Below are positions 2,454-44,770 of a stretch of DNA of 64,000 nt, in pieces. The position numbers were made by a program, and so were the translations under genes. Source of the stretch: Convolutriloba macropyga (lineage: Eukaryota); NCBI RefSeq assembly GCF_964194025.1, contig NC_134472.1:62434001-62498000 (forward strand), written 5' to 3'. Below the pieces are notes generated by a model. It did no database searches and was not told the DNA's origin. It saw only the letters and a program-made list of their open reading frames with translations. How positions within the stretch are numbered: the first letter of the stretch is position 1; each line of letters opens with the position of its first letter.

Positions 2454-5400
2454 TGGCGCAGTCAGCAACTAAACGAACACCTATCGGAATTGACCCTTTC
2501 TGGGACAAACTTACACCCGATCCCCCTCTTCGCTGGGAGAAATGGAGAGTGCAGTACAGATTGGTACTGTTGGCAAAGGAGAATATCATTCTCGATACGC
2601 TACTTGGACCTAAACCTGAGATGGTGGAACTTCCTCTTGAGCCAATATATGGAGAGACAATAGTGGGTGCTTCCGCATAATCGGAGAGAGAGAGGAACGC
2701 GCGCAACGCGCAACAGAAAATGAACTGGCAAAACAAATGCCAACGACTAATAGAAGTGGGTATCATGTGTGGTGACAAACCGTGGCCACTGGCAGATCGT
2801 AAAACTGTATCTCTACTCTACCTAAGCATCGTAATAGAAGGACGTTGCATACCAATTGCAAGAATCCGCACATCATGATCGATACCCTCGCTACTGTAGA
2901 CTTCTGGAAGATCGTGGAAGAGGCATTCATCCGCCCTCGCAACATAACTTTCGATCGTCATGTCTTTTTGGTTACGAAACAATTTCGGGGAGAAACAGTA
3001 GAACATTTCTATGGAAAATTAAAGGAATTGGCAGAAAACTGTGACTTTCAGAACAAGGAAGAGACCCTGATACGCAACGTCTTCATCACTAATCTGATGG
3101 ATCCTGAAATTCAAAAGGAACTTCTAAAACAAACCGTCGAACCGCGGCAGGCTTTGGAGCTAGCAAGCAACATGGAACTCGGGATGCAAAACCAACAACA
3201 AATACAGCAACACAACAAGATGGTTGTTCCGGCAAACGTCAACGCGGTCCAATTCGCCAATAATTCCCGAAACTCGTACTGGCAAAATACGAACAATGCC
3301 CCAAAACAAAACAATCGTTCGACACTCAATTGCTCAAGCTGCGAAGGAATGTGGCTTCCGAATCACCGCAAAAAATGTATCGCGAAAGGCAAAACGTGTA
3401 ACAATTATGGACTTCTAAATCATTTCGCGAAGGTTTGTAGAAAACAAAAGAATGTGAATACAAAACCACAAAACTCAAAGAAAAAGATGGTACGTGTTGT
3501 GGAAGAAGAACCGCATCCCTAGGACTCAGTGAATTTTCTACAACCAGCCAAACTGTATGAATCGGACAAGAGTAGTGGAGAAGAGGATAACACGGTTGCG
3601 GTGATTGAGAACGCTGTAGAGAAAGTAGAACCACTCAACATGCCAATCAAGATTGGCAATCTCAACACTACACTACTCGTGGACTCCGGGAGCGCATGTA
3701 GTATTCTCAACCGTTCACTCGCATCGCAAGTGGTACAAAGCAGTCCTCGCGCTTTCTGGATTAACAAAAAGGTGTCCCCACAACTTCGGACCTTTTCAAA
3801 TGAACCAATCCAGGTTGAGGGAAAGATACAATCCCCAATAATGAGCAATGGTTGGACATGTGATTCAGCGACATTCACAGTTGTAGCTGACGGACTAAAG
3901 TCTCTAATTGGCCGTGATTTATTTGATCAACTTGGTTTGGCAGTGATTCAATCTACATCTCAAAAAGGTAATCATGTCAACAACATTTCATCCCCATAAT
4001 TCAAAGAACAAATCGCAAAAACTTTGCCCGAATTGATATGGCGTATTGGAAGATCGAATAGTCATGTAGCAAAATCTAAGTTTCACAAAGATTTCCAACC
4101 TAGACATCAAAAAAGTAGACGTATTCCAATTAATCTACAAGAAAAAGTTAATATCGAACTTAAAAAACTGTTAGACGAAAAACATATTATAAAACTTTCA
4201 AGCTGCCCTGATAAATATTTCATATCACCAATTGTGGCCACAGTACAGAAAGACCAAACAATAAAGCTCGGATTCAAAAGTATTAAACAAAGCCATTCAA
4301 AAGAATAATTATTAGATGCCGAATATTGATACGTTAATTGAATCCATTTCTCAACAAATAAGTGCTCCCGCGTCGCAAAACAAAACGTACTTCTCTTCGA
4401 TTGATTTGAAATACGCTTACAGTCAGTTGCATTTAGACGCTAAAACGGCCAATCACTGTAACTTTAATATCATCAGTGGTGATATGACTGGCACTTACAG
4501 ATTTCAAACAGGATTTTACGGTCTCACAGATATGCCAGCTGAATTTCAAAAAGCTATGGATTACACCCTAATTGGCTTAAAAAATACATATTGTTTTCTG
4601 GACGATATTTTGATTGTTAGCAAAGGATCTCTGGAAGAACATAAAAACTATGTAATTAAATGTCTGCAAAGATTAGATGATAAAAATTTTAGGATACAAC
4701 TTCCTAAATGTCATTTTGGGAAGTTAGAAATTGATTGGCTTGGATACCATATCTCGCACTCAGGTATCTCGCCTCTTGAAAGCAAAACAGCTGCTATATT
4801 AACACTCGAAGCTCCAAAAACTCTAAAGAAACTCCGTTCTTTTTTTGGATCAGTTCACTACATTGGGAAATTCATTCCTAATCTTGCTCAAATTAGTTAC
4901 CCCCTCCGCCCATTACTGAAAAAGTCATCAGAATTTCTCTGTACAGCGGAACATAAGAACTGTTTTAACGAGATTAAAACTCGCATTGCGAACGCAGCCG
5001 CAAACAGCCACTATAACCCGCAACTCGAAAAGCGCGTGAAATGTGATGCGTCACGTTCCGGCCTCGGAGCAGCTCTTGAACAACTAACAGTTGATGGGTG
5101 GAAACCAATCGCATTTGCGTCTCAATTTTTAAATTCATGCGAAGAACGTTATATTGTAAATGAACTTGAACTTCTGGGTGCAGTCTGGTCAATTGAATAT
5201 TTCAAAAAATATTTGTATCGAAAACATTTTACGGTGATTACGGATCATCGTGCACTTCTATCAATCATGAAAGAAAATAGATCGAATAAATCCTACAACA
5301 GCAGATTGACCCGCTGGGTCGATCGCTTACTCCCTTTTAAAATTGAAATTGAACATCTTCCCGGGGCGGAAATGGGTTTAGTCGACTACATTTCTAGACA

Positions 5401-35116: not shown

Positions 35117-35320
35117 NNNNNNNNNNNNNNNNNNNNNNNNNNNNNNNNNNNNNNNNNNNNNNNNNNNNNNNNNNNNNNNNNNNNNNNNNNNNNNNNNNNN
35201 NNNNNNNNNNNNNNNNNNNNNNNNNNNNNNNNNNNNNNNNNNNNNNNNNNNNNNNNNNNNNNNNNNNNNNNNNNNNNNNNNNNNNNNNNNNNNNNNNNNN
35301 NNNNNNNNNNNNNNNNNNNN
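35117..35320. other. N-run of 204 nt at the RTE 3' end
   Basis: Counted directly. Confidence 0.95.
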
Positions 35321-38300
35321 CAAAAATGAAATAAAGGCACGGTTGGCAACAAATACAAACAAAACAAGAAGAGTTATTTGTTTGGTTATTCTGTGAAGTG
35401 CTGTACGACGAAATTGTTGAAGGCATTCTTTGACCCGGTTGCTGCTTTCTCCTGCAATCTGGTGAACGATACTTTGTTTCGTACACAGTCTCCTTCGATT
35501 TGACTCATCCACGTTTTCCGTTGCCCCCCAGGAGCGCGTCTAGCATGGACGTATTGATCGGGCGGGTCCCAATCGAAGGTACTGCGGGCTAATCTTCCTG
35601 GTTCCATTCTCTGGATGTGTCCGTACCATTTTATCCGTTTGAGCATGATCATCGTGGATAGTTGGGGCATTCGTGATCTTGACATAATTTCTTCGTTCGT
35701 TGCTTTCTCCAGATATGACACACGTAGAATTCTCCGAAGACAACCACAGTGGAAACTCTCAAGGTTTCTCTCCATTAATTTCGAAAGAGTCCAAGTCTCT
35801 GAGCTGTACAGCACGGCTGATAAAACGAGTGCTTTGTACAAATTGCACTTGAGGTGCACGCTGAGCTGCTTGCTCTTCCAGAGATTTTGGAAGTTAGCAA
35901 ACCGTTGTCTACCTTCTGCAAGTTTGCAATTGACTTCCTGCAGGTCTCCATGCTTGAGGCTGACATATGATCCGAGATACTTGAACGCTTCTATGTTTTC
36001 AAACTCGTTTCCGAGAACATCTTTTACTTTGCAGGAAAACACGCGTGTGGCAACTGCTTTAGGTTTGCCACAGTATCTCGATTGGTGAACTTTTCGGCCA
36101 TTGACTGTTTTGAACTTTCTTTCACACTTGTCACAGGTAAGGCTCGCCTCTAGTTGCTCGAACTTTGACTTGTCGACGACATTCTTTGACAAACCGGCTT
36201 TGCAGAATCTTGTTTGGTGCACTTTGCGTCCGGTAACTGTACTGAATTGCCGCTGACAATTCTGACATCTTAAAGACTCTTGGTCAGCCACCACTGACCG
36301 ACTCTCATTTTCTAGCGACTCTGAATCTGCTACCGCAGATTGTTGTTGTGAAGCTACCAACGCTGGCTTAGCCACCGCTAAGCTTTTCAATCTTAGCTTC
36401 CGGCCATCTTGTGTTTCGAACCAGCCCGCTTTCTTTTTCGTTCCCAGCAGCACCTCCGTGCTGATGGTTAGTCGTGACTGGCTAGATGTCTCTGCCAGGA
36501 GTCCTAGTTTGCCTTTATGTGTTCCAGTGAGTATCTCCACGTTCTGTTGGATACTAGGCACTGCAACAACATTTGGGCTGTCGCATTTTACGCCCATATA
36601 TTTTTTTTTTGGCCACATTAATCTTCAGACCAGCGGCTTCCGCAAGGGCTTCGATTCGATGTAGGTTTTCTTGCACTCACTGTCTGAGACCCCCACGAGA
36701 GCAACATCATCAGCAAAATTCAAGTCAGCCACCAATCTCCCAATGTCTAATCCTCCATGCACCGAGTTAGCCAAAATGTAGTTGATGACAAGGCCGAATA
36801 GGATTGGGGACCACACATCACCCTGCCTAACGCCCGTTCTGATATCAGATAAGCGTCCTTTCTCACCTTCGGCTTTGACTCGACATTTGAATCCATCATA
36901 GCTGTTTCTTATGATGTTTATCACTTTTTGCGGAAGACCATAGTGTTTCATTATCTGGTACATCTGCTCACGATCGACAGAATCGAATGCCGCTCGAAAG
37001 ACTATGAAACAAAAGCTAATATCCAATTGAAACGCCATTGATTTCTCTATTATTTGACGCAGGGCAGAGAGTTGATCGGCGCATCCTCTGCTTTTTCTGA
37101 AGCCGCACTGCTCTTCCCTTAAGACGCGATCCACTGAATCTTTGCATCGATTGAGAATAACGGAAGCGAACACTTTGCCTGGTACTGACAATAGAGAGAT
37201 CCCTCGGTGGTTCGAACACTCTGACCTCTTTCCTTTACTCTTGTATACACTTATCTATGATGTCCCAGAGCCACTCGACAATACCCTTGTGTGCTTTCAA
37301 CATCTCACAGGAAATGTTATCGGGTCCACTTGCCTTGCCATTCTTCAACCTGCGGACAGCTTCAAGCACTTCTTCAAATCGAATTGGGCTCAGGTCAATC
37401 GACAAGCTTTCAGCTGCTTCTTCGGGATCCAATCTCGTACTGCAACTGGATGTTGAGGGATTCAGGAGTTGACTAAAATGTTCCGTCCAGCGTTCAAGTC
37501 GTTCCTCTTTCGTCCGTAAGTTGACGCCAGTGCTTGAAACTAATTTGGTCAACTGAGGACTCCAGTTTCGGCAAATCTGCTGTGATGCCCCAAAAACCTC
37601 CTTCAAGTTGCCTCTGTCCGCAAAGCTCTGCACTTCTTGGCCTTTGCGTTCAAGCCATGCCCGTTTGTCTGCACGTAGAGCTTTTCTGACTTCCTTACAG
37701 CAGTTTGTGAACTCTAACAACGCCACCGAGCTGCTGTGTTTCTTCAACTGTAGATCAGCTCGTTTCCGGATAAGTTCCAGAGAATCTGGAGAAATCCAAG
37801 GTTTGTTCACTCGCTTGCCCGGAAGGAGGCATTTCACTGCTGCTTGGTTCAGGGCTTTTCGAAAATTGTCCCAAGACTGCTCTGTATTCTCGTAATCGCC
37901 GCTCTTATCCAGATGTAACTTGACCTCCTGCGTGAATAAGTCACGCGTTGTTTCATCTTGCAGCTTTGCAGAACTGATTCTGGGCGTGAAACATGGCTTT
38001 TTAGACAAAAGTTTCATAGATACTTCCGCAATGACCATTTCATGATCGGTAATTGTGGTTTTCCCTCTTCTGGTCCTCACATTCGTCAGACATCCTCTGT
38101 ATCTCTCTGCAAACAGAATGTGATCCAGCATCTTTTTTCGACAACTCGGATCGGGAGGGTTGTAGGTGTACCGATGCACTTGTCGATGCTAGAACCATGT
38201 ACCACCTACGAGCAATTTGTGTGAAGTGCAAAATGATAACAACTTTTCCGAGTTTTCATTTTCTTCACCCATTCCAAACGGGCCTCTGCAGCTCATGGTG

Positions 38301-38966
38301 TCATTCAACTGGTGTCCAGGCTCTGCATTGAGGTCACCGATGACACAAATACGCTCCCTATGTTCGAAGCTGGAAACTAGGTCTGAAAGTTGACTCCAAA
38401 ACAAATCCTTCTCTTGGAGACTAGCTTCATTCGTAGGTGCGTAGCAGACAACAACAGCTAGATTGGCTCTCCTCCGAGCCGCGAACTTGACGTAGCAAAT
38501 ACGTTCACTTAGAGCCACTTGTTCTACGACGCTGTTTATCAATGACTTCTTTACAGCAACGCCCACTCCTCCTTGTCTCGACTTTACACCAGACAACCAC
38601 GAGTCAGACAGGTAGAGCTTGTGGTCTCCGAGATCAATTTCTTGCTCCTGAAATCTCGTCTCCTGCACTCCCAGAATATCCAACTTGTATTGCGCCAGAT
38701 CCATTTTCAAAGCCTCTAAAGATCCGGCTTGGGTCAGTGTTCTGACGTTTAAAGTTGCAATTCTGAGTTGGTTCCTCGGGAGATTCTTAGCACCCCTTAC
38801 CCGGGACTCGGGGCCATGGTTGAATGTACTCATTGCTTTGGTGTTTGAAGGCTGAGATACGACTAGTTGCGCCACAAACTAGAAGACCAGTGCCTCGTTA
38901 GCTCGACCATGTGAGCGGAGAGCCGCAGCACATGACCTACCCCCAGGGGATACCACGTGGAGGTGA
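35321..38966 (-). mobile_element. RTE-clade non-LTR retrotransposon, copy 1 (APE-RT single ORF, disrupted)
   Basis: APE motifs IATLNVRTL, GVQET, CYAPT, GDLNA, LDH; RT motifs QCGFR, RQGD, FADD, FKYLGS; RTE C-terminus WYGHIQRM...W.P...RR.PGGQRKTW; one nonsense codon, a 53-bp deletion near 37248 and frameshifts. Confidence 0.93.
38892..38966 (-). ncRNA. HDV-like self-cleaving ribozyme at the RTE 5' end (5' strands hidden in the N-run)
   Basis: UC-ACC-UCCACGU-GGU-AUCCCCU-GG-...P4 hairpin...-GCUAAC-GAGGC follows the antigenomic HDV layout (ACC-UCCUCGC-GGU-P1'-GG-P4-GCUAA-P2'). Confidence 0.85.
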
Positions 38967-39188
38967 NNNNNNNNNNNNNNNNNNNNNNNNNNNNNNNNNN
39001 NNNNNNNNNNNNNNNNNNNNNNNNNNNNNNNNNNNNNNNNNNNNNNNNNNNNNNNNNNNNNNNNNNNNNNNNNNNNNNNNNNNNNNNNNNNNNNNNNNNN
39101 NNNNNNNNNNNNNNNNNNNNNNNNNNNNNNNNNNNNNNNNNNNNNNNNNNNNNNNNNNNNNNNNNNNNNNNNNNNNNNNNNNNNNNNN
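38967..39188. other. N-run of 222 nt at an RTE tail-to-head junction
   Basis: Counted directly. Confidence 0.95.
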
Positions 39189-42100
39189 CAAATATGAAAT
39201 AAAGGCACGGTTGGCAACAAATACAAACAAAACAAGAAGAGTCATTTGTTTGGTTATTCTGTGAAGTGCTGTACGACGAAATTGTTGAAGGCATTCTTTG
39301 ACCCGGTTGCTGCTTTCTCCTGCACTGTGTACGATACTTTGTTTCGTACACAGTCTCCTTCGATTTAACTCATCCACGTTTTCCGTTGCCCCCCAGGAGC
39401 GCGTCTAGCATGGACGTATTGATCGGGCGGGTCCCAATCGAAGGCACTGCGGGCTAATCTTCCTGGTTCCATTCTCTGGATGTGTCCGTACCATTTTATC
39501 CGTTTGAGCATGATCATCGTGGATAGTTGGGGCATTCGTGATCTTGACACAATTTCTTCGTTCGTTGCTTTCTCCAGATATGACACACGTAGAATTCTCC
39601 GAAGACAACCACAGTGGAAACTCTCAAGTTTTCTCTCCATTAATTTCGAAAGAGTCCAATTCTCTGAGCTGTACAGCACGGCTGATAAAACGAGTGCTTT
39701 GTACAAATTGCACTTGAGGTGCACGCTGAGCTGCTTGCTCTTCCAGAGATTTTGGAAGTTAGCAAATTGTTGTCTACCTTCTGTAAGTTTGCAATTGACT
39801 TCCTGCAGGTCTCCATGCTTGAGGCTGACATATGATCCGAGATACTTGAATGCTTCTATGTTTTCAAACTCGTTTCCGAGAACATCTTGTACTTTGCAGG
39901 AAAACACGCGTGTGGCAACTGCTTTAGGTTTGCCACAGTATCTCGATTGGTGAACTTTTCGGCCATTGACTGCTTTGAACTTTCTTTCACACTTGTCACA
40001 GGTAAGGCTCGCCTCTAGTTGCTCGAACTTTGACTTGTCGACGACATTCTTTGACAAACCGGCTTTGCAGAATCTTGTTTGGTGCACTTTGCGTCCGGTA
40101 ACTGTACTGAATTGCCGCTGACAATTCTGACATCTTAAAGACTCTTGGTCAGCCACCACTGACCGACTCTCATTTTCTAGCGACTCTGAATCTGCTACCG
40201 CAGATTGTTGTTGTGAAGCTACCAACGCTGGCTTAGCCACCGCTAAGCTTTTCAATCTTAGCTTCCGGCCATCTTGTATTTCGAACCAGCCCGCTTTCTT
40301 TTTCGTTCCCAGCAGCACCTCCGTGCTGATGGTTAGTCGTGACTGGCTAGATGTCTCTGCCAGGAGTCCTAGTTTGCCTTTATGTGTTCCAGTGAGTATC
40401 TCCACGTTCTGTTGGATACTAGGCACTGCAACAACATTTGGGCTGTCGCATTTTACGCCCATATATTTTTTTTTTTGGCCACATTAATCTTCAGACCAGC
40501 GGCTTCCGCAAGGGCTTCGATTCGATGTAGGTTTTCTTGCACTCACTGTCTGAGACCCCCACGAGAGCAACATCATCAGCAAAATTCAAGTCAGCCACCA
40601 ATCTCCCAATGTCTAATCCTCCATGCACCGAGTTAGCCAAAATGTAGTTGATGACAAGGCCGAATAGGATTGGGGACCACACATCACCCTGCCTAATGCC
40701 CGTTCTGACATCAAATAAGCGTCCTTTCTCACCTTCGGCTTTGACTCGACATTTGAATCCATCATAGCTGTTTCTTATGATGTTTATCACTTTTTGCGGA
40801 AGACCATAGTGTTTCATTATCTGGTACATCTGCTCACGATCAACAGAATCGAATGCCGCTCGAAAGTCTATGAAACAAAAGCTAATATCCAATTGAAACT
40901 CCATTGATTTCTCTATTATTTGACGCAGGGCAAAGAGTTGATCGGCGCATCCTCTGCTTTTTCTGAAGCCGCACTGCTCTTCCCTTAAGACGCAATCCAC
41001 TGAATCTTTGCATCGATTGAGAATAATGGAAGCGAACACTTTGCCTGGTACTGACAATAGAGAGATCCCTCGGTGGTTCGAACACTCTGACCTCTTTCCT
41101 TTACTCTTGTATAATGGGACAATTTCTGCTACCTTCCAGTCATCGGGTAGAACTTCCGTCGACCAACACTTATCTATGATGTCCCAGAGCCACTCGACAA
41201 TACCCTTGTGTGCTTTCAATATCTCACAGGAAATGTTATCGGGTCCACTTGCCTTGCCATTCTTCAACCTGCGGACAGCTTCAAGCACTTCTTCAAATCG
41301 AATTGGGCTCAGGTCAATCGACAAGCTTTCAGCTGCTTCTTCGTGATCCAATCTCGTGCTGCAACTGGATGTTGAGGGATTCAGGAGTTGACTAAAATGT
41401 TCCGTCCAGCGTTCAAGTCGTTCCTCTTTCGTCCGTAAGTTGACGCCAGTGCTTGAAACTAATTTGGTCAACTGGGGACTCCAGTTTCGGCAAATCTGCT
41501 GTGATGCCCCAAAAACCTCCTTCAAGTTGCCTCTGTCCGCAAAGCTCTGCACTTCTTGGCCTTTGCGTTCAAGCCATGCCCGTTTTCTGCACGTAGAGCT
41601 TTTCTGACTTCCTTACAGCAGTTTGTGAACTCTAACAACGCCACCGCGCTGCTGTGTTTCTTCAACTGTAGATCAGCTCGTTTCCGGATAAGTTCCAGAG
41701 AATCTGGAGAAATCCAAGGTTTGTTCACTCGCTTGTCCGGAAGGAGGCATTTCACTGCTGCTTGGTTCAGGGCTTTTCGAAAATTGTCCCAAGACTGCTC
41801 TGTATTCTCGAAATCGCCGCTCTTATTAAGATGTAACTTGAACTCCTGCATGAATATGTCACGCGTTGTTTCATCTTGCAGCTTTGCAGAACTGATTCTG
41901 GGCGTGAAACATGGCTTTTTAGACAAAAGTTCCATAGATACTTCCGCAATGACAAGTTCATGATCGGTAATTGTGGTTTTCCCTCTTCTGGTCCTCACAT
42001 TCGTCAGACATCCTCTGTATCTCTCTGCAAACAGAATGTGATCCAGCATCTTTTTTCGACAACTCGGATCGGGAGGTTTGTAGGTGTACCGATGCACTTG

Positions 42101-42882
42101 CCGATGCTGGAACCATGTACCACCTACGAGCAGTTTGTGTGAAGTGCAAAATGATAACAACTTTTCCGAGTTTTCATTTTCTTCACCCATTCCAAACGGG
42201 CCTCTGCAGCTCATGGTGTCATTCAACTGGTGTCCAGGCTCTGCATTGAGGTCACCGATGACACAAATACGCTCCCTATGTTTGAAGCTGGAAACTAGGT
42301 CTGAAAGTTGACTCCAAAACAAATCCTTCTCTTGGAGACTAGCTTCATTCGTAGGTGCGTAGCAGACAACAACAGCTAGATTGGCTCTCCTCCGAGCCGC
42401 GAACTTGACGTAGCAAATACGTTCACTTAGAGCCACTTGTTCTACGACGCTGTTTATCAATGACTTCTTTACAGCAACGCCCACTCCTCCTTGTCTCGAC
42501 TTTACACCAGACAACCACGAGTCAGACAGGTAGAGCTTGTGGTCTCCGAGATCAATTTCTTGCTCCTGCAATCTCGTCTCCTGCACTCCCAGAATATCCA
42601 ACTTGTATTGCGCCAGATCCATTTTCAAAGCCTCTAAAGATCCGGCTTGGGTCAGTGTTCTGACGTTTAAAGTTGCAATTCTGAGTTGGTTCCTCGGGAG
42701 ATTCTTAGCACCCCTTACCCGGGACTCGGGGCCATGGTTGAATGTACTCATTGCTTTGGTGTTTGAAGGCTGAGATACGACTAGCTGCGCCACAAACTAG
42801 AAGACCAGTGCCTCGTTAGCTCGACCATGTGAGCGGAGAGCCGCAGCACATGACCTACCCCCAGGGGACACCACGTGGAGGT
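39189..42882 (-). mobile_element. RTE-clade non-LTR retrotransposon, copy 2
   Basis: About 98% identical to copy 1, lacks the 53-bp deletion, has its own frameshifts and shares the -1 frameshift after FADD. Confidence 0.93.
42810..42882 (-). ncRNA. HDV-like ribozyme, copy 2
   Basis: Same fold as 38892-38966, with P1' GUCCCCU. Confidence 0.85.
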
Positions 42883-43310
42883 NNNNNNNNNNNNNNNNNN
42901 NNNNNNNNNNNNNNNNNNNNNNNNNNNNNNNNNNNNNNNNNNNNNNNNNNNNNNNNNNNNNNNNNNNNNNNNNNNNNNNNNNNNNNNNNNNNNNNNNNNN
43001 NNNNNNNNNNNNNNNNNNNNNNNNNNNNNNNNNNNNNNNNNNNNNNNNNNNNNNNNNNNNNNNNNNNNNNNNNNNNNNNNNNNNNNNNNNNNNNNNNNNN
43101 NNNNNNNNNNNNNNNNNNNNNNNNNNNNNNNNNNNNNNNNNNNNNNNNNNNNNNNNNNNNNNNNNNNNNNNNNNNNNNNNNNNNNNNNNNNNNNNNNNNN
43201 NNNNNNNNNNNNNNNNNNNNNNNNNNNNNNNNNNNNNNNNNNNNNNNNNNNNNNNNNNNNNNNNNNNNNNNNNNNNNNNNNNNNNNNNNNNNNNNNNNNN
43301 NNNNNNNNNN
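42883..43310. other. N-run of 428 nt at an RTE tail-to-head junction
   Basis: Counted directly. Confidence 0.95.
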
Positions 43311-43824
43311 CAAATATGAAATAAAGGCACGGTTGGCAACAAATACAAACAAAACAAGAAGAGTTATTTGTTTGGTTATTCTGTGAAGTGCTGTACGACG
43401 AAATTGTTGAAGGCATTCTTTGACCCGGTTGCTGCTTTCTCCTGCAATCTGGTGAACGATACCTTGTTTCGTACACAGTCTCCTTCGATTTGACTCATCC
43501 ACGTTTTCCGTTGCCCCCCAGGAGCGCGTCTAGAATGGACGTATTGATCGGGCGGGTCCCCCAATCGAAGGCACTGCGGGCTAATCTTCCTGGTTCCATT
43601 CTCTGGATGTGTCCGTACCATTTTATCCGTTTGAGCATGATCATCGTGGATAGTTGGGGCATTCGTGATCTTGACATAATTTCTTCGTTCGTTGCTTTCT
43701 CCAGATATGACACACGTAGAATTCTCCGAAGACAACCACAGTGGAAACTCTCAAGTTTTCTCTCCATTAATTTCGAAAGGGTCACTTAGAGCCACTTATT
43801 CTGCGATGCTGTTTATCAATGACT

Positions 43825-43825
<1 letters not shown>
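43311..43825 (-). mobile_element. RTE copy 3: 3' 470 bp fused to a 44-bp endonuclease fragment
   Basis: 43311-43783 matches the RTE 3' end; 43782-43825 matches the APE region (42423-42466) with 3 mismatches. Confidence 0.88.

Positions 43826-43893
<68 letters not shown>
43825..43893. repeat. (TAC)23 microsatellite
   Basis: Perfect trinucleotide run of 69 bp. Confidence 0.97.
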
Positions 43894-43895
<2 letters not shown>

Positions 43896-44770
43896 TTCTC
43901 CTGTTATTTGCTGCCCCTAGAGCTCATATTTAAACAGTTGCAAATAAACTATCATTTCTATGCGGAAGATACAGTTATTTATTTTGTCTATGAGGAAACG
44001 GTGACTCAGGGGAAGTTTGATCTGATTATTAGCACCTTACAGAAATGATTTTGTGGCGCCAAATTGAAATTGAATATAAGTAAAACAGAGTTTATGAAAG
44101 TAGTGCGAAATAAATCTTTCAACGCAGATCTAAAGCTCCCTTTGGATTCCAAATTTTCGAATCATCCTTGGCTTCATTTTGGAGGAAAAATTTCGTTTTC
44201 AAAGCAAGTCAGCTCGGTTACTTCTGCCTGCTACTATGTGCTGCGGAAGATCTGTACTATCAGAGACACAGTTGACAGTGATGTCCTAATAGGGTTGGTA
44301 TGCGTTACGATTATTTCGCGGCCTGACTACTGCAAATCACTTTATTATGGATTACCTGCTGTACTTCATGGGAAGTTACAACGGATAATGAATTGTGCAT
44401 GCAGGCTGATATTTCGACTGTCACCAGGAACACCAATTTCAAGATTCATCAAGCAGCTACATTGGTTACCTGTTCAGAAACGTGTGCTGTTTAATTTTTT
44501 ACTTTTTGGCCATCGCCTAATTCATCATCCTTAAGGAGTTCCAGGGTATCTTAGCTCTCTTGTGTCTCGCAATGATAAAGTTACAAGATGACATATATTT
44601 ACAACCTTCAAATTTTGGTCACTAAAACTAACTTTGGAAAAACATCTTTCAGCCATGCAATTCCGCATGATTGGAACAGACTGCCATTTGAATTGGAACT
44701 AATACCAGATGGACTTACATACAGGAAGAAAACGAAAACTTTTTTTGATAGTTTTAAATTGCTGCAATTT
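43894..44770 (+). mobile_element. L2/CR1-group LINE RT 3' fragment
   Basis: LLFSCYLLPL...YHFYAEDT, KLNISKTE, SRPDYCKSLYYGLP...KLQRIMN.ACRLI...LHWLPV, FGKTSFS...WNRLP. Confidence 0.85.

What the first reader, a model, noticed from the sequence alone, without database searches (positions are those of the whole stretch)
35117..43893. Head-to-tail RTE array with an HDV-like ribozyme at each junction: a possible self-processing multimer
Seen: three same-orientation RTE copies (two full-length, ~98% identical, one truncated) lie tail-to-head. Each full copy begins with an HDV-type core on the minus strand: P3 ACC/GGU, L3 UCCACGU, P1' RUCCCCU, P1.1 GG, P4 GGUCAUGUG-CU-GCGG-CUCU-CCGC-U-CACAUGGUC, J4/2 GCUAAC carrying the catalytic C, and P2' GAGGC. 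Known: HDV-like ribozymes occur at the 5' ends of R2 and RTE elements and release them from read-through transcripts. Inference: one read-through transcript would be cut into unit-length RNAs, so each cleavage would set both the 5' end of one unit and the 3' end of the previous one. The masked 5' strand is predicted to read GGGGGAY...GCCUC; GGGGGAU would pair with both observed P1' variants.
Basis: partly seen in the sequence, partly recalled or inferred. Interest (0 to 1): 0.85.

Follow-up and report, generated by a model that had tools for sequence, protein, structure and literature searches.

The report
RTE retrotransposon array with HDV-like ribozymes
Three broken copies of an RTE-type jumping gene lie head-to-tail on the minus strand, and each full copy starts with what looks like a known kind of self-cutting RNA (an HDV-like ribozyme), so this is a new example of a known arrangement, not a new mechanism.

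Summary
The visible observation holds. Two near-full RTE copies (98.7% identical, each with its own indels) and one deleted copy lie co-oriented on the minus strand. They are separated only by the three N runs. Each full copy starts with the 3' two-thirds of an HDV-like fold (P3, L3, P1', P1.1, P4, J4/2, P2').

The 5' strands of P1 and P2 are masked.

Two sister RTE families (about 67% identical), in unmasked contigs of what appears to be the same acoel species (Convolutriloba macropyga), carry the complete fold. One scores 38.3 bits (E 1.3e-4) against Rfam HDV_ribozyme, below the gathering score of 50. In these families the predicted cut site abuts a (GTA)n tract, which is also the elements' own tail repeat.

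All 15 neighbouring RTE units in seven stretches are co-oriented. The window's copies are no closer to each other than to copies elsewhere. The arrays therefore most likely grow by repeated insertion into tail microsatellites.

Cutting of a read-through transcript into units would follow logically but is untested. All copies here have broken reading frames.

Close precedents exist: Dong, L1Tc and RTE ribozymes. The scan also noted RTE-borne HDV-like ribozymes elsewhere in this genome.

The parts
35117..35320 (.). N run (204) downstream of copy A's 3' end. Unread; not filled.
   Evidence: By analogy of coordinates with unmasked arrays it probably holds the rest of the 3' UTR and a period-3 tail. 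This is inference only.
35321..38966 (-). RTE copy A, near full length and broken. It has an in-frame stop near 38180-38188, a 53-nt deletion at about 37247 and an in-frame TGA at 36625-36627.
38892..38966 (-). Visible 3' two-thirds of the HDV-like fold of copy A. P2' 38892-38896; J4/2 38897-38904 with the putative catalytic C at 38901; P4 38905-38937; P1.1 GG 38943-38944; P1' 38945-38951; P3' 38952-38954; L3 38955-38961; P3 38962-38964; last two letters of the P2 5' strand 38965-38966.
38967..39188 (.). N run (222) between the head of copy A and the tail of copy B. Unread.
39189..42882 (-). RTE copy B, near full length, with two frame changes (about 41552 and about 40476). The ORF begins at ATG 42751-42749 and stops at 39365-39367.
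42810..42882 (-). Visible part of the HDV-like fold of copy B. P2' 42810-42814; putative catalytic C 42819; P4 42823-42855; P1' 42863-42869 (G instead of A at its first position); L3 42873-42879; P3 42880-42882.
42883..43310 (.). N run (428) between the head of copy B and the tail of copy C. Unread.
43311..43825 (-). RTE copy C. The 3' 468 nt (element 3227-3694) are joined to a 44-nt piece of element 417-460. There is no ribozyme.
43825..43893 (-). (GTA)n on the element strand ((TAC)n on the + strand), directly upstream of copy C. It is the same repeat as the tail of sister family 2.
38863..38882 (-). Small hairpin just 3' of the ribozyme (CUAGU...ACUAG stem), also present in families 2 and 3.

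Best explanation
These are three insertions of one young, high-copy RTE-type non-LTR retrotransposon family of an acoel (Convolutriloba macropyga or a very close relative).

As in other RTEs, the element RNA most likely begins with an HDV-like self-cleaving ribozyme. The ribozyme cuts the element free at its first nucleotide from any longer transcript.

The elements end in a (GTA)n-type tail. New copies preferentially integrate into such tracts, which include the tails of older copies. Co-oriented head-to-tail arrays of full, truncated and mixed-family units therefore build up.

In such an array each ribozyme sits right after the previous unit's tail. A read-through transcript would then be cut into units. 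That is a consequence of the layout and need not be its purpose.

Shown: the anatomy, the co-orientation, and the complete fold in sister families.
Inferred: cleavage, tail-targeted integration and read-through. This particular array consists of dead copies.
For: Elements:
- EN and RT domains in one broken ORF.

Ribozyme:
- The visible ribozyme strings are present at both full 5' ends.
- Sister families 2 and 3 (65-68% nt identity) hold a complete fold: a 7-bp P1 starting with G.U, a 4-bp P2, P3/L3, P1.1, and the invariant GAGCUAAC-GAGG. P4 differs in sequence and length in each family but always forms a hairpin.
- 94.6% of cells are paired, against 36-63% when the 3' partners are slid.
- The family 3 copy scores 38.3 bits, E 1.3e-4, against RF00094 over the whole model. 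The only other Rfam hits are two further HDV-type models. Family 2 gives the same three models, more weakly.
- All 9 full 5' ends carry the core. The one core-motif match elsewhere is the unrelated minus-strand site in L007.

Arrays:
- The family 2 tail is (GTA)n.
- An orphan (GTA)n runs right up to the predicted cut site in L002.
- In 7 full-length copies the period-3 run ends 19-31 nt before the P3 core, 19-23 nt in six of them.
- All 30 RTE pieces, including 15 non-anchor units, are co-oriented.
- Window copies A, B and C are 98.3-98.7% identical to each other and 98.1-99.4% identical to copies elsewhere.

Literature: RTE ribozymes cut at the element's 5' end (PMC3774820, PMC6765202).
Against: - P1 and P2 5' strands of this family are masked, so the fold is incomplete as seen.
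- All Rfam scores are below gathering.
- No compensatory double changes occur in P1, P2 or P3.
- All four family 2 copies have a U.U at the first P3 pair.
- Copy A has an A at the first P1' position where the sister families have a G. This breaks one pair unless it is compensated.
- Without the 5' strand the G run can pair with the P3/L3 region.
- There is no RNA-end or cleavage data.
- Tail continuity at this locus is unread.
- RTE clade placement rests on architecture and not on a tree.
Confidence: 0.7

Rival explanations
1. The array is a functional self-processing multimer. One read-through transcript is cut at each ribozyme into unit-length RNAs, whose 3' ends (tail repeat with a 2',3'-cyclic phosphate) and 5' ends are both made by the ribozymes. 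Arrays are then favoured source loci.
For: The cut site abuts the upstream tail repeat in sister families. Arrays are very common. No AAUAAA is visible in the 3' UTR. A similar argument was made for L1Tc (PMC3185411).
Against: All units here have broken ORFs. Arrays also contain ribozyme-less 5'-truncated units and orphan microsatellites, so they form without selection for multimers. No promoter or host gene was identified upstream: the flank checked holds a 5'-truncated LINE on the opposite strand, and first-reader notes place further TEs beyond it. No transcript evidence exists: the runs laid were contigs of unknown kind.
Confidence: 0.25
2. The array is an assembly artefact: a collapsed or duplicated repeat, or scaffolding of unrelated contigs across gaps.
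For: Every junction is an N run, so adjacency was never read.
Against: A and B differ at 48 sites and by several indels. C has its own deletion. The same head-to-tail layout is seen in five N-free stretches from two other assemblies, with junctions of 50-528 nt, the range of the N runs. All three N runs end at the same element position, and two begin within 2 nt of each other. That fits breaks or masks at a tail repeat.
Confidence: 0.04
3. The array arose by local tandem duplication or unequal crossing-over of one inserted unit, not by repeated insertion.
For: Units are adjacent, co-oriented and about 98% identical.
Against: Identities are star-like: A, B and C are no closer to one another than to copies at other loci. 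Units differ in structure and in junction length. Arrays elsewhere mix families and truncation points.
Confidence: 0.05
4. The motif is an inactive relic or a look-alike 5' UTR structure, for example a translation or RT-binding element, and does not cleave.
For: Rfam scores are sub-threshold. There is a U.U in P3 of family 2. No covariation occurs in the core helices. There is a competing pairing.
Against: All defining positions of the HDV fold are in register in three families. P4 is free to vary. Full-length copies begin at the predicted cut site. This is the genomic footprint seen for proven LINE ribozymes (PMC3774820).
Confidence: 0.1

Closest known systems
HDV-like ribozymes at the 5' ends of RTE and other non-LTR retrotransposons (Ruminski et al. 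2011, as cited in PMC6765202 and PMC3774820; Rfam RF00094, RF01787 drz-agam-1)
   Same: Same position (first nucleotides of the element). Same nested double-pseudoknot layout. L3 and J4/2 letters match. J1/2 of the sister families resembles drz-agam-1 (CAAAAUCC). The presumed role is release from co-transcripts.
   Different: The host is an acoel. Scores lie below Rfam gathering. The P4 domains are family-specific. Activity is untested. The 5' strands are masked in the window's own copies.
Bombyx mori Dong (R4 clade): a (TAA)n-specific LINE with an HDV-like ribozyme that cuts at the repeat/element junction in vitro (PMC3774820)
   Same: A microsatellite directly abuts the ribozyme cleavage site at the element's 5' end. 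The element inserts into a simple repeat.
   Different: Different clade (R4 versus RTE-like), a different type of endonuclease by established knowledge of these clades, and a different repeat. Here the target repeat equals the element's own tail, which gives long mixed arrays.
L1Tc/NARTc of Trypanosoma cruzi (PMC3185411)
   Same: An HDV-like ribozyme at the 5' end. Copies are found in tandem. The authors proposed that the ribozyme keeps RNAs monocistronic given weak polyadenylation signals.
   Different: L1 clade, with an internal promoter overlapping the ribozyme, in a setting of polycistronic transcription.
Penelope-like elements and Schistosoma SINE-like repeats with hammerhead ribozymes in tandem (PMC6765202)
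   Same: Tandem copies whose transcripts are thought to be cut into units by an embedded self-cleaving ribozyme.
   Different: A different ribozyme class and element class. There the tandem layout is needed for promoter use or for ribozyme dimerisation, and nothing here suggests that.
Perere-3 (RTE clade) of Schistosoma mansoni with twister-variant ribozymes and GTAA tail repeats (PMC8501958)
   Same: An RTE-clade element with a 5' self-cleaving ribozyme and a short tandem-repeat tail.
   Different: The ribozyme there is a twister variant, not HDV-like, and insertion is described as non-specific.

Membership tests
HDV-like self-cleaving ribozyme | P1 helix of about 7 bp starting at the cleavage site, usually with G1.U | tested here: inconclusive
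   In the window only the 3' strand (A/GUCCCCU) is visible. The 5' strand is masked and was not read. Sister families 2 and 3 have all 7 pairs, with G1.U.
HDV-like self-cleaving ribozyme | P3 of 3 bp closing a 7-nt L3 | tested here: met
   ACC / UCCACGU / GGU in A and B. The match to the P3-L3 positions of drz-agam-1 is in register.
HDV-like self-cleaving ribozyme | P1.1: two L3 cytosines pair with the two G after P1' | tested here: met
   CC in L3 and GG after P1' in A and B. 13 of 14 cells are paired across the alignment.
HDV-like self-cleaving ribozyme | Variable P4 hairpin followed by J4/2 with the catalytic C, then P2' | tested here: met
   P4 hairpin of -14 kcal/mol in family 1. Families 2 and 3 have different hairpins at the same place. 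GAGCUAAC-GAGG is invariant. The C aligns with the GCuAA of RF00094.
HDV-like self-cleaving ribozyme | P2 pairing that closes the double pseudoknot | tested here: inconclusive
   In copy A only the last 2 nt of the 5' strand are visible, and they pair. CCUC/GAGG is complete in families 2 and 3.
HDV-like self-cleaving ribozyme | Match to a curated model at its gathering score | tested here: not met
   No hit at gathering in the window. The best sister-family score is 38.3 against a gathering score of 50, E 1.3e-4. Structure-defined HDV-like ribozymes are often missed by these models (own knowledge).
HDV-like self-cleaving ribozyme | Self-cleavage giving 5'-OH and 2',3'-cyclic phosphate | not testable with these tools
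   Needs transcription and cleavage assays or RNA-end mapping.
RTE clade of non-LTR retrotransposons | Single ORF with an N-terminal APE-type endonuclease and a reverse transcriptase, and no ORF1 | tested here: met
   Exo_endo_phos then RVT_1 in co-linear ORF pieces. The ATG lies about 130 nt after the visible start.
RTE clade of non-LTR retrotransposons | Very short 3' UTR ending in short tandem (often trinucleotide) repeats, not poly(A) (Malik and Eickbush 1998, as cited in PMC1852546) | tested here: inconclusive
   65 nt of 3' UTR are visible after the stop, then N. Sister family 2 ends in (GTA)n. By coordinates only, family 1 copies elsewhere are followed by period-3 runs.
RTE clade of non-LTR retrotransposons | RT phylogeny places it within RTE | not tested
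   No reference RTE sequences were available through the tools. The nearest named protein is an uncharacterised C. macropyga protein. The atlas hits are generic RVT_1 clusters.

The most novel reading that the evidence does not exclude
In this acoel, RTE families that share one tail repeat, (GTA)n, use each other's tails as landing sites. They grow long mixed arrays that act as polycistronic source loci. Each HDV-like ribozyme would cut exactly at the repeat/element border. It would create both the capless 5' end of one unit and a repeat-terminated, cyclic-phosphate 3' end of the unit before it, which would be ready to anneal to a (TAC)n/(GTA)n target for reverse transcription. That would make the ribozyme a two-ended processing device and the array a self-extending structure.
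Probability: 0.2. Interest if true: 0.55.

Novelty: new member of a known kind. Interest (0 to 1): 0.35.

Why it matters
If confirmed, it extends RTE-borne HDV-like ribozymes to Xenacoelomorpha. It also gives a clean natural case in which a LINE's own tail repeat, its integration target and its ribozyme cut site coincide. That makes one open question directly testable: whether ribozyme cleavage supplies the 3' end as well as the 5' end of a LINE template. Mapping 5'-OH and 2',3'-cP ends at array junctions would answer it. For genome annotation, it explains why long (GTA)n tracts flanked by RTE heads and tails break or mask assemblies of this species. The principle (a 5' ribozyme, a microsatellite junction, tandem LINEs) is already in the literature, so the gain is incremental.

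Tried and rejected
- Rfam on the whole window at gathering score found nothing.
- Rfam on a stretch containing the Ns found nothing. Only when the stretch was cut at the N boundary did weak truncated drz-agam-1 hits appear.
- Folding the visible piece alone gave z -0.84, which is uninformative without the 5' strand.
- Covariation counting found no double changes in the core helices because the three families are too alike there.
- The protein atlas gave only generic RVT_1 clusters, so there is no clade call.
- The sequencing runs are coded and of unknown kind, and they are kept as contigs. Read laying could therefore give neither RNA ends nor expression. It gave only a rough sign that the RTE 3' part is some hundreds to thousands of times deeper than the unique flank.
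- Ruminski 2011 (PMC3308841) is not held in the library, so its content is cited through PMC6765202 and PMC3774820.
- I considered and rejected assembly duplication and local tandem duplication.
- I rejected the idea of a hidden 204-nt unit in the N runs. Unmasked junctions of the same family measure 50, 110, 207, 272, 346, 357 and 528 nt (coordinates).
- The locus fetched as a "different species" comparator (L001) turned out to hold 98-99% identical copies of the window's own family. From then on I used only coordinates for family 1 junctions in all fetched loci. I read letters only for the other families.
Full report
**What is there.** The window has exactly three N runs: 35117-35320, 38967-39188 and 42883-43310. 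Between and beside them, on the minus strand, lie three copies of one element.
- Copy A is at 35321-38966.
- Copy B is at 39189-42882.
- Copy C is at 43311-43825.

A and B match at 3592 of 3640 ungapped columns (98.7%). They differ by a 53-nt deletion in A, three small internal indels, and a 2-nt difference in where the visible letters start at the 5' boundary. They are therefore distinct copies and not one sequence written twice.

C consists of element positions 3227-3694 joined to a 44-nt piece of positions 417-460. On the element strand it is preceded by (GTA)n at 43825-43893. No other copy is in the window.

The ORF pieces carry Exo_endo_phos followed by RVT_1. A has two in-frame stops and a frameshifting deletion. 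B has two frame changes. All three copies are dead as autonomous elements.

The flanks are other transposons. A 5'-truncated LINE RT on the + strand begins at 43894.

**The gaps.** I could not test continuity across the N runs directly.

What can be said is this. All three runs end at the same element position, the last visible base of the 3' UTR. The two that precede a full copy begin within 2 nt of the same position in the ribozyme. That regularity fits breaks or masks placed at a repeat that sits at every junction. It does not fit random gaps.

**The ribozyme, visible part.** In copy A, on the minus strand:
- P3 is at 38962-38964, L3 at 38955-38961 and P3' at 38952-38954.
- P1' is at 38945-38951, and the GG of P1.1 at 38943-38944.
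- A 33-nt P4 hairpin is at 38905-38937 (-14 kcal/mol).
- J4/2 carries the C at 38901, and P2' is at 38892-38896.

Copy B is the same, shifted by 3918 nt, with G for A at the first P1' position. The two letters visible before P3 in copy A can pair with P2'.

Taken alone this part is not statistically convincing.
- Rfam gives nothing at gathering.
- It gives only truncated drz-agam-1 matches of 15.6 and 14.5 bits, E 0.75 and 1.4.
- The fold energy is ordinary, z -0.84, with a competing pairing of the G run against P3/L3.

**Relatives.** A protein search with the endonuclease piece found many 90-98% identical proteins from an ENA assembly. The nearest named protein is from the acoel Convolutriloba macropyga.

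I fetched that protein's locus as an outside comparator (L001, GCA_964194025.3). It turned out to hold 98-99% identical copies of the window's own family next to a second family that is about 67% identical. The window is therefore from that species or a very close relative.

From that point I used only coordinates for junctions of the window's family. I read letters only for the other families.

Five N-free loci gave four copies of family 2 and one of family 3. All five show a complete HDV-like fold at the element's first nucleotides:
- a 7-bp P1 that starts with G.U;
- a 4-bp P2;
- P3/L3 and P1.1;
- a P4 hairpin that differs in sequence and length in each family (26, about 41 and 33 nt);
- an invariant GAGCUAAC-GAGG.

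On the alignment 94.6% of cells pair, against 36-63% when the 3' partners are slid. There are no double compensatory changes in the core helices.

The family 3 copy scores 38.3 bits (E 1.3e-4) against RF00094 over the whole model. The only other matches among 4227 families are the two other HDV-type models. Family 2 gives the same three models at weaker scores. It has a U.U at the first P3 pair.

The case for an HDV-like ribozyme in this RTE lineage is therefore good. For the window's own family it rests on homology of the visible two-thirds.

**The arrays.** Mapping copy B on the seven stretches gave 30 RTE pieces, all co-oriented. Counted as insertion units and leaving out the anchor of each stretch, 15 of 15 neighbours share the anchor's orientation. 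Random orientation would give that about 3 times in 100,000.

The arrays mix full-length, 5'-truncated, internally deleted and different-family units.

The tail of family 2 is (GTA)n. In L002 an orphan (GTA)n runs right up to the predicted cleavage site. In all seven full-length copies examined a period-3 run ends 19-31 nt before the P3 core, and 19-23 nt in six of them. This includes two copies of the window's family, measured by coordinates only. In families 2 and 3 that length is exactly the P1 + J1/2 + P2 5' segment.

Unmasked junctions of the window's family span 50-528 nt, which brackets the three N-run lengths.

Over the shared 3' 468 nt, A, B and C are 98.3-98.7% identical to each other and 98.1-99.4% identical to copies at other loci. 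That star-like pattern speaks for independent insertions from a recent burst. It speaks against local duplication and against an assembly duplicate.

Contig word depth over the RTE 3' part is some hundreds to thousands of times that of the unique flank. The tool warns that this is not a copy number.

**Mechanism.** The best-supported reading is this. The element RNA is released at its first nucleotide by the ribozyme, as described for RTE, R4/Dong, baggins and L1Tc (PMC3774820, PMC6765202). Integration favours (GTA)n tracts, which the elements themselves create as tails, so arrays grow head-to-tail.

Full-length copies that begin at the predicted cut site immediately after the repeat are the genomic footprint expected of cleavage. 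The same footprint is known from proven LINE ribozymes.

In an array, cleavage would also leave the upstream unit ending in its tail repeat. That step, and read-through transcription itself, are inferred. No promoter or host gene was identified upstream of this array, its units have broken ORFs, and no transcript data could be obtained.

**Comparison with what is known.**
- HDV-like ribozymes at RTE 5' ends are published (Ruminski 2011, cited in PMC6765202 and PMC3774820).
- Dong, a (TAA)n-specific LINE, has an HDV-like ribozyme that cleaves off a (TAA)7 leader in vitro (PMC3774820).
- For tandem L1Tc/NARTc the authors already proposed that the ribozyme keeps RNAs monocistronic (PMC3185411).
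- Trinucleotide tails are a stated RTE hallmark (PMC1852546).

The finding is thus a new member of a known kind. Two local features stand out: the host phylum, and the coincidence of tail repeat, target and cut site, which gives mixed-family arrays.

The scan's first readers also noted HDV-like ribozymes at RTE 5' ends on other pieces of this genome. A separate first-reader note on this same stretch suggests a hidden 204-nt unit in the N runs. The variable junction lengths do not support it.

**Limits.**
- RTE clade placement is by architecture only.
- Nothing here demonstrates catalysis.

Noticed in passing
L001 1-6330; L004 4124-11375; L006 1970-12828: Head-to-tail arrays mix the window's RTE family with a roughly 67%-identical second family, in the same orientation. 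Different families appear to share one kind of landing site.
   Followed up: partly
L001 647-2352; L006 4392-5652; window 43311-43825: Internally deleted copies keep the ribozyme head (first 137 or 311 nt) and the 3' end. They resemble the short internally deleted non-autonomous derivatives described for R2 (PMC3414825). Window copy C is a deleted form without the head.
   Followed up: no
window 38863-38882 and 42781-42800 (minus strand): A small hairpin with a CUAGU/ACUAG stem lies just downstream of the ribozyme. It is kept in all three RTE families, and its role is unknown.
   Followed up: no
window 36600-36627 and 40462-40493 (minus strand): Both copies have a TGA in the RT frame just before an A run (10 in A, 11 in B). 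In A the frame stays open again two codons later. This is a shared stop or a slippery tract inside the RT, next to the zinc-finger insertion that another first-reader note describes.
   Followed up: partly
window 39400-42700: Runs labelled as several different coded organisms (B to E) hold 27-53% of the element's 31-mers, not far below the best holder (64%). These may be close relatives, mislabelled or mixed samples, or transfer. It is unresolved because the names are coded.
   Followed up: no
L001 2710-2745; L005 5789-5825: The J1/2 segment of the acoel RTE ribozymes (CAAAAUCC) and their P3/L3 match the Anopheles drz-agam-1 consensus closely. This hints at an old, shared RTE-type ribozyme lineage.
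   Followed up: no
L007 about 10919, minus strand (another ENA sample): A P3/L3-like core (CCUCCACGUGG) followed by GCUAAA occurs away from the RTE-like ORF of that locus. It may be chance or belong to another element.
   Followed up: no
window 43894-44534, plus strand: The 3' part of another LINE reverse transcriptase (FYAEDT... motif) starts abruptly where the (TAC)n ends. The RTE array sits inside or beside an older, oppositely oriented LINE.
   Followed up: no
window 35320/35321, 39188/39189, 43310/43311: All three N runs end at the same element position, and two begin within 2 nt of the same ribozyme position. The hidden stretch is systematic, as a break or mask at a repeat would be, and not a random gap.
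   Followed up: partly
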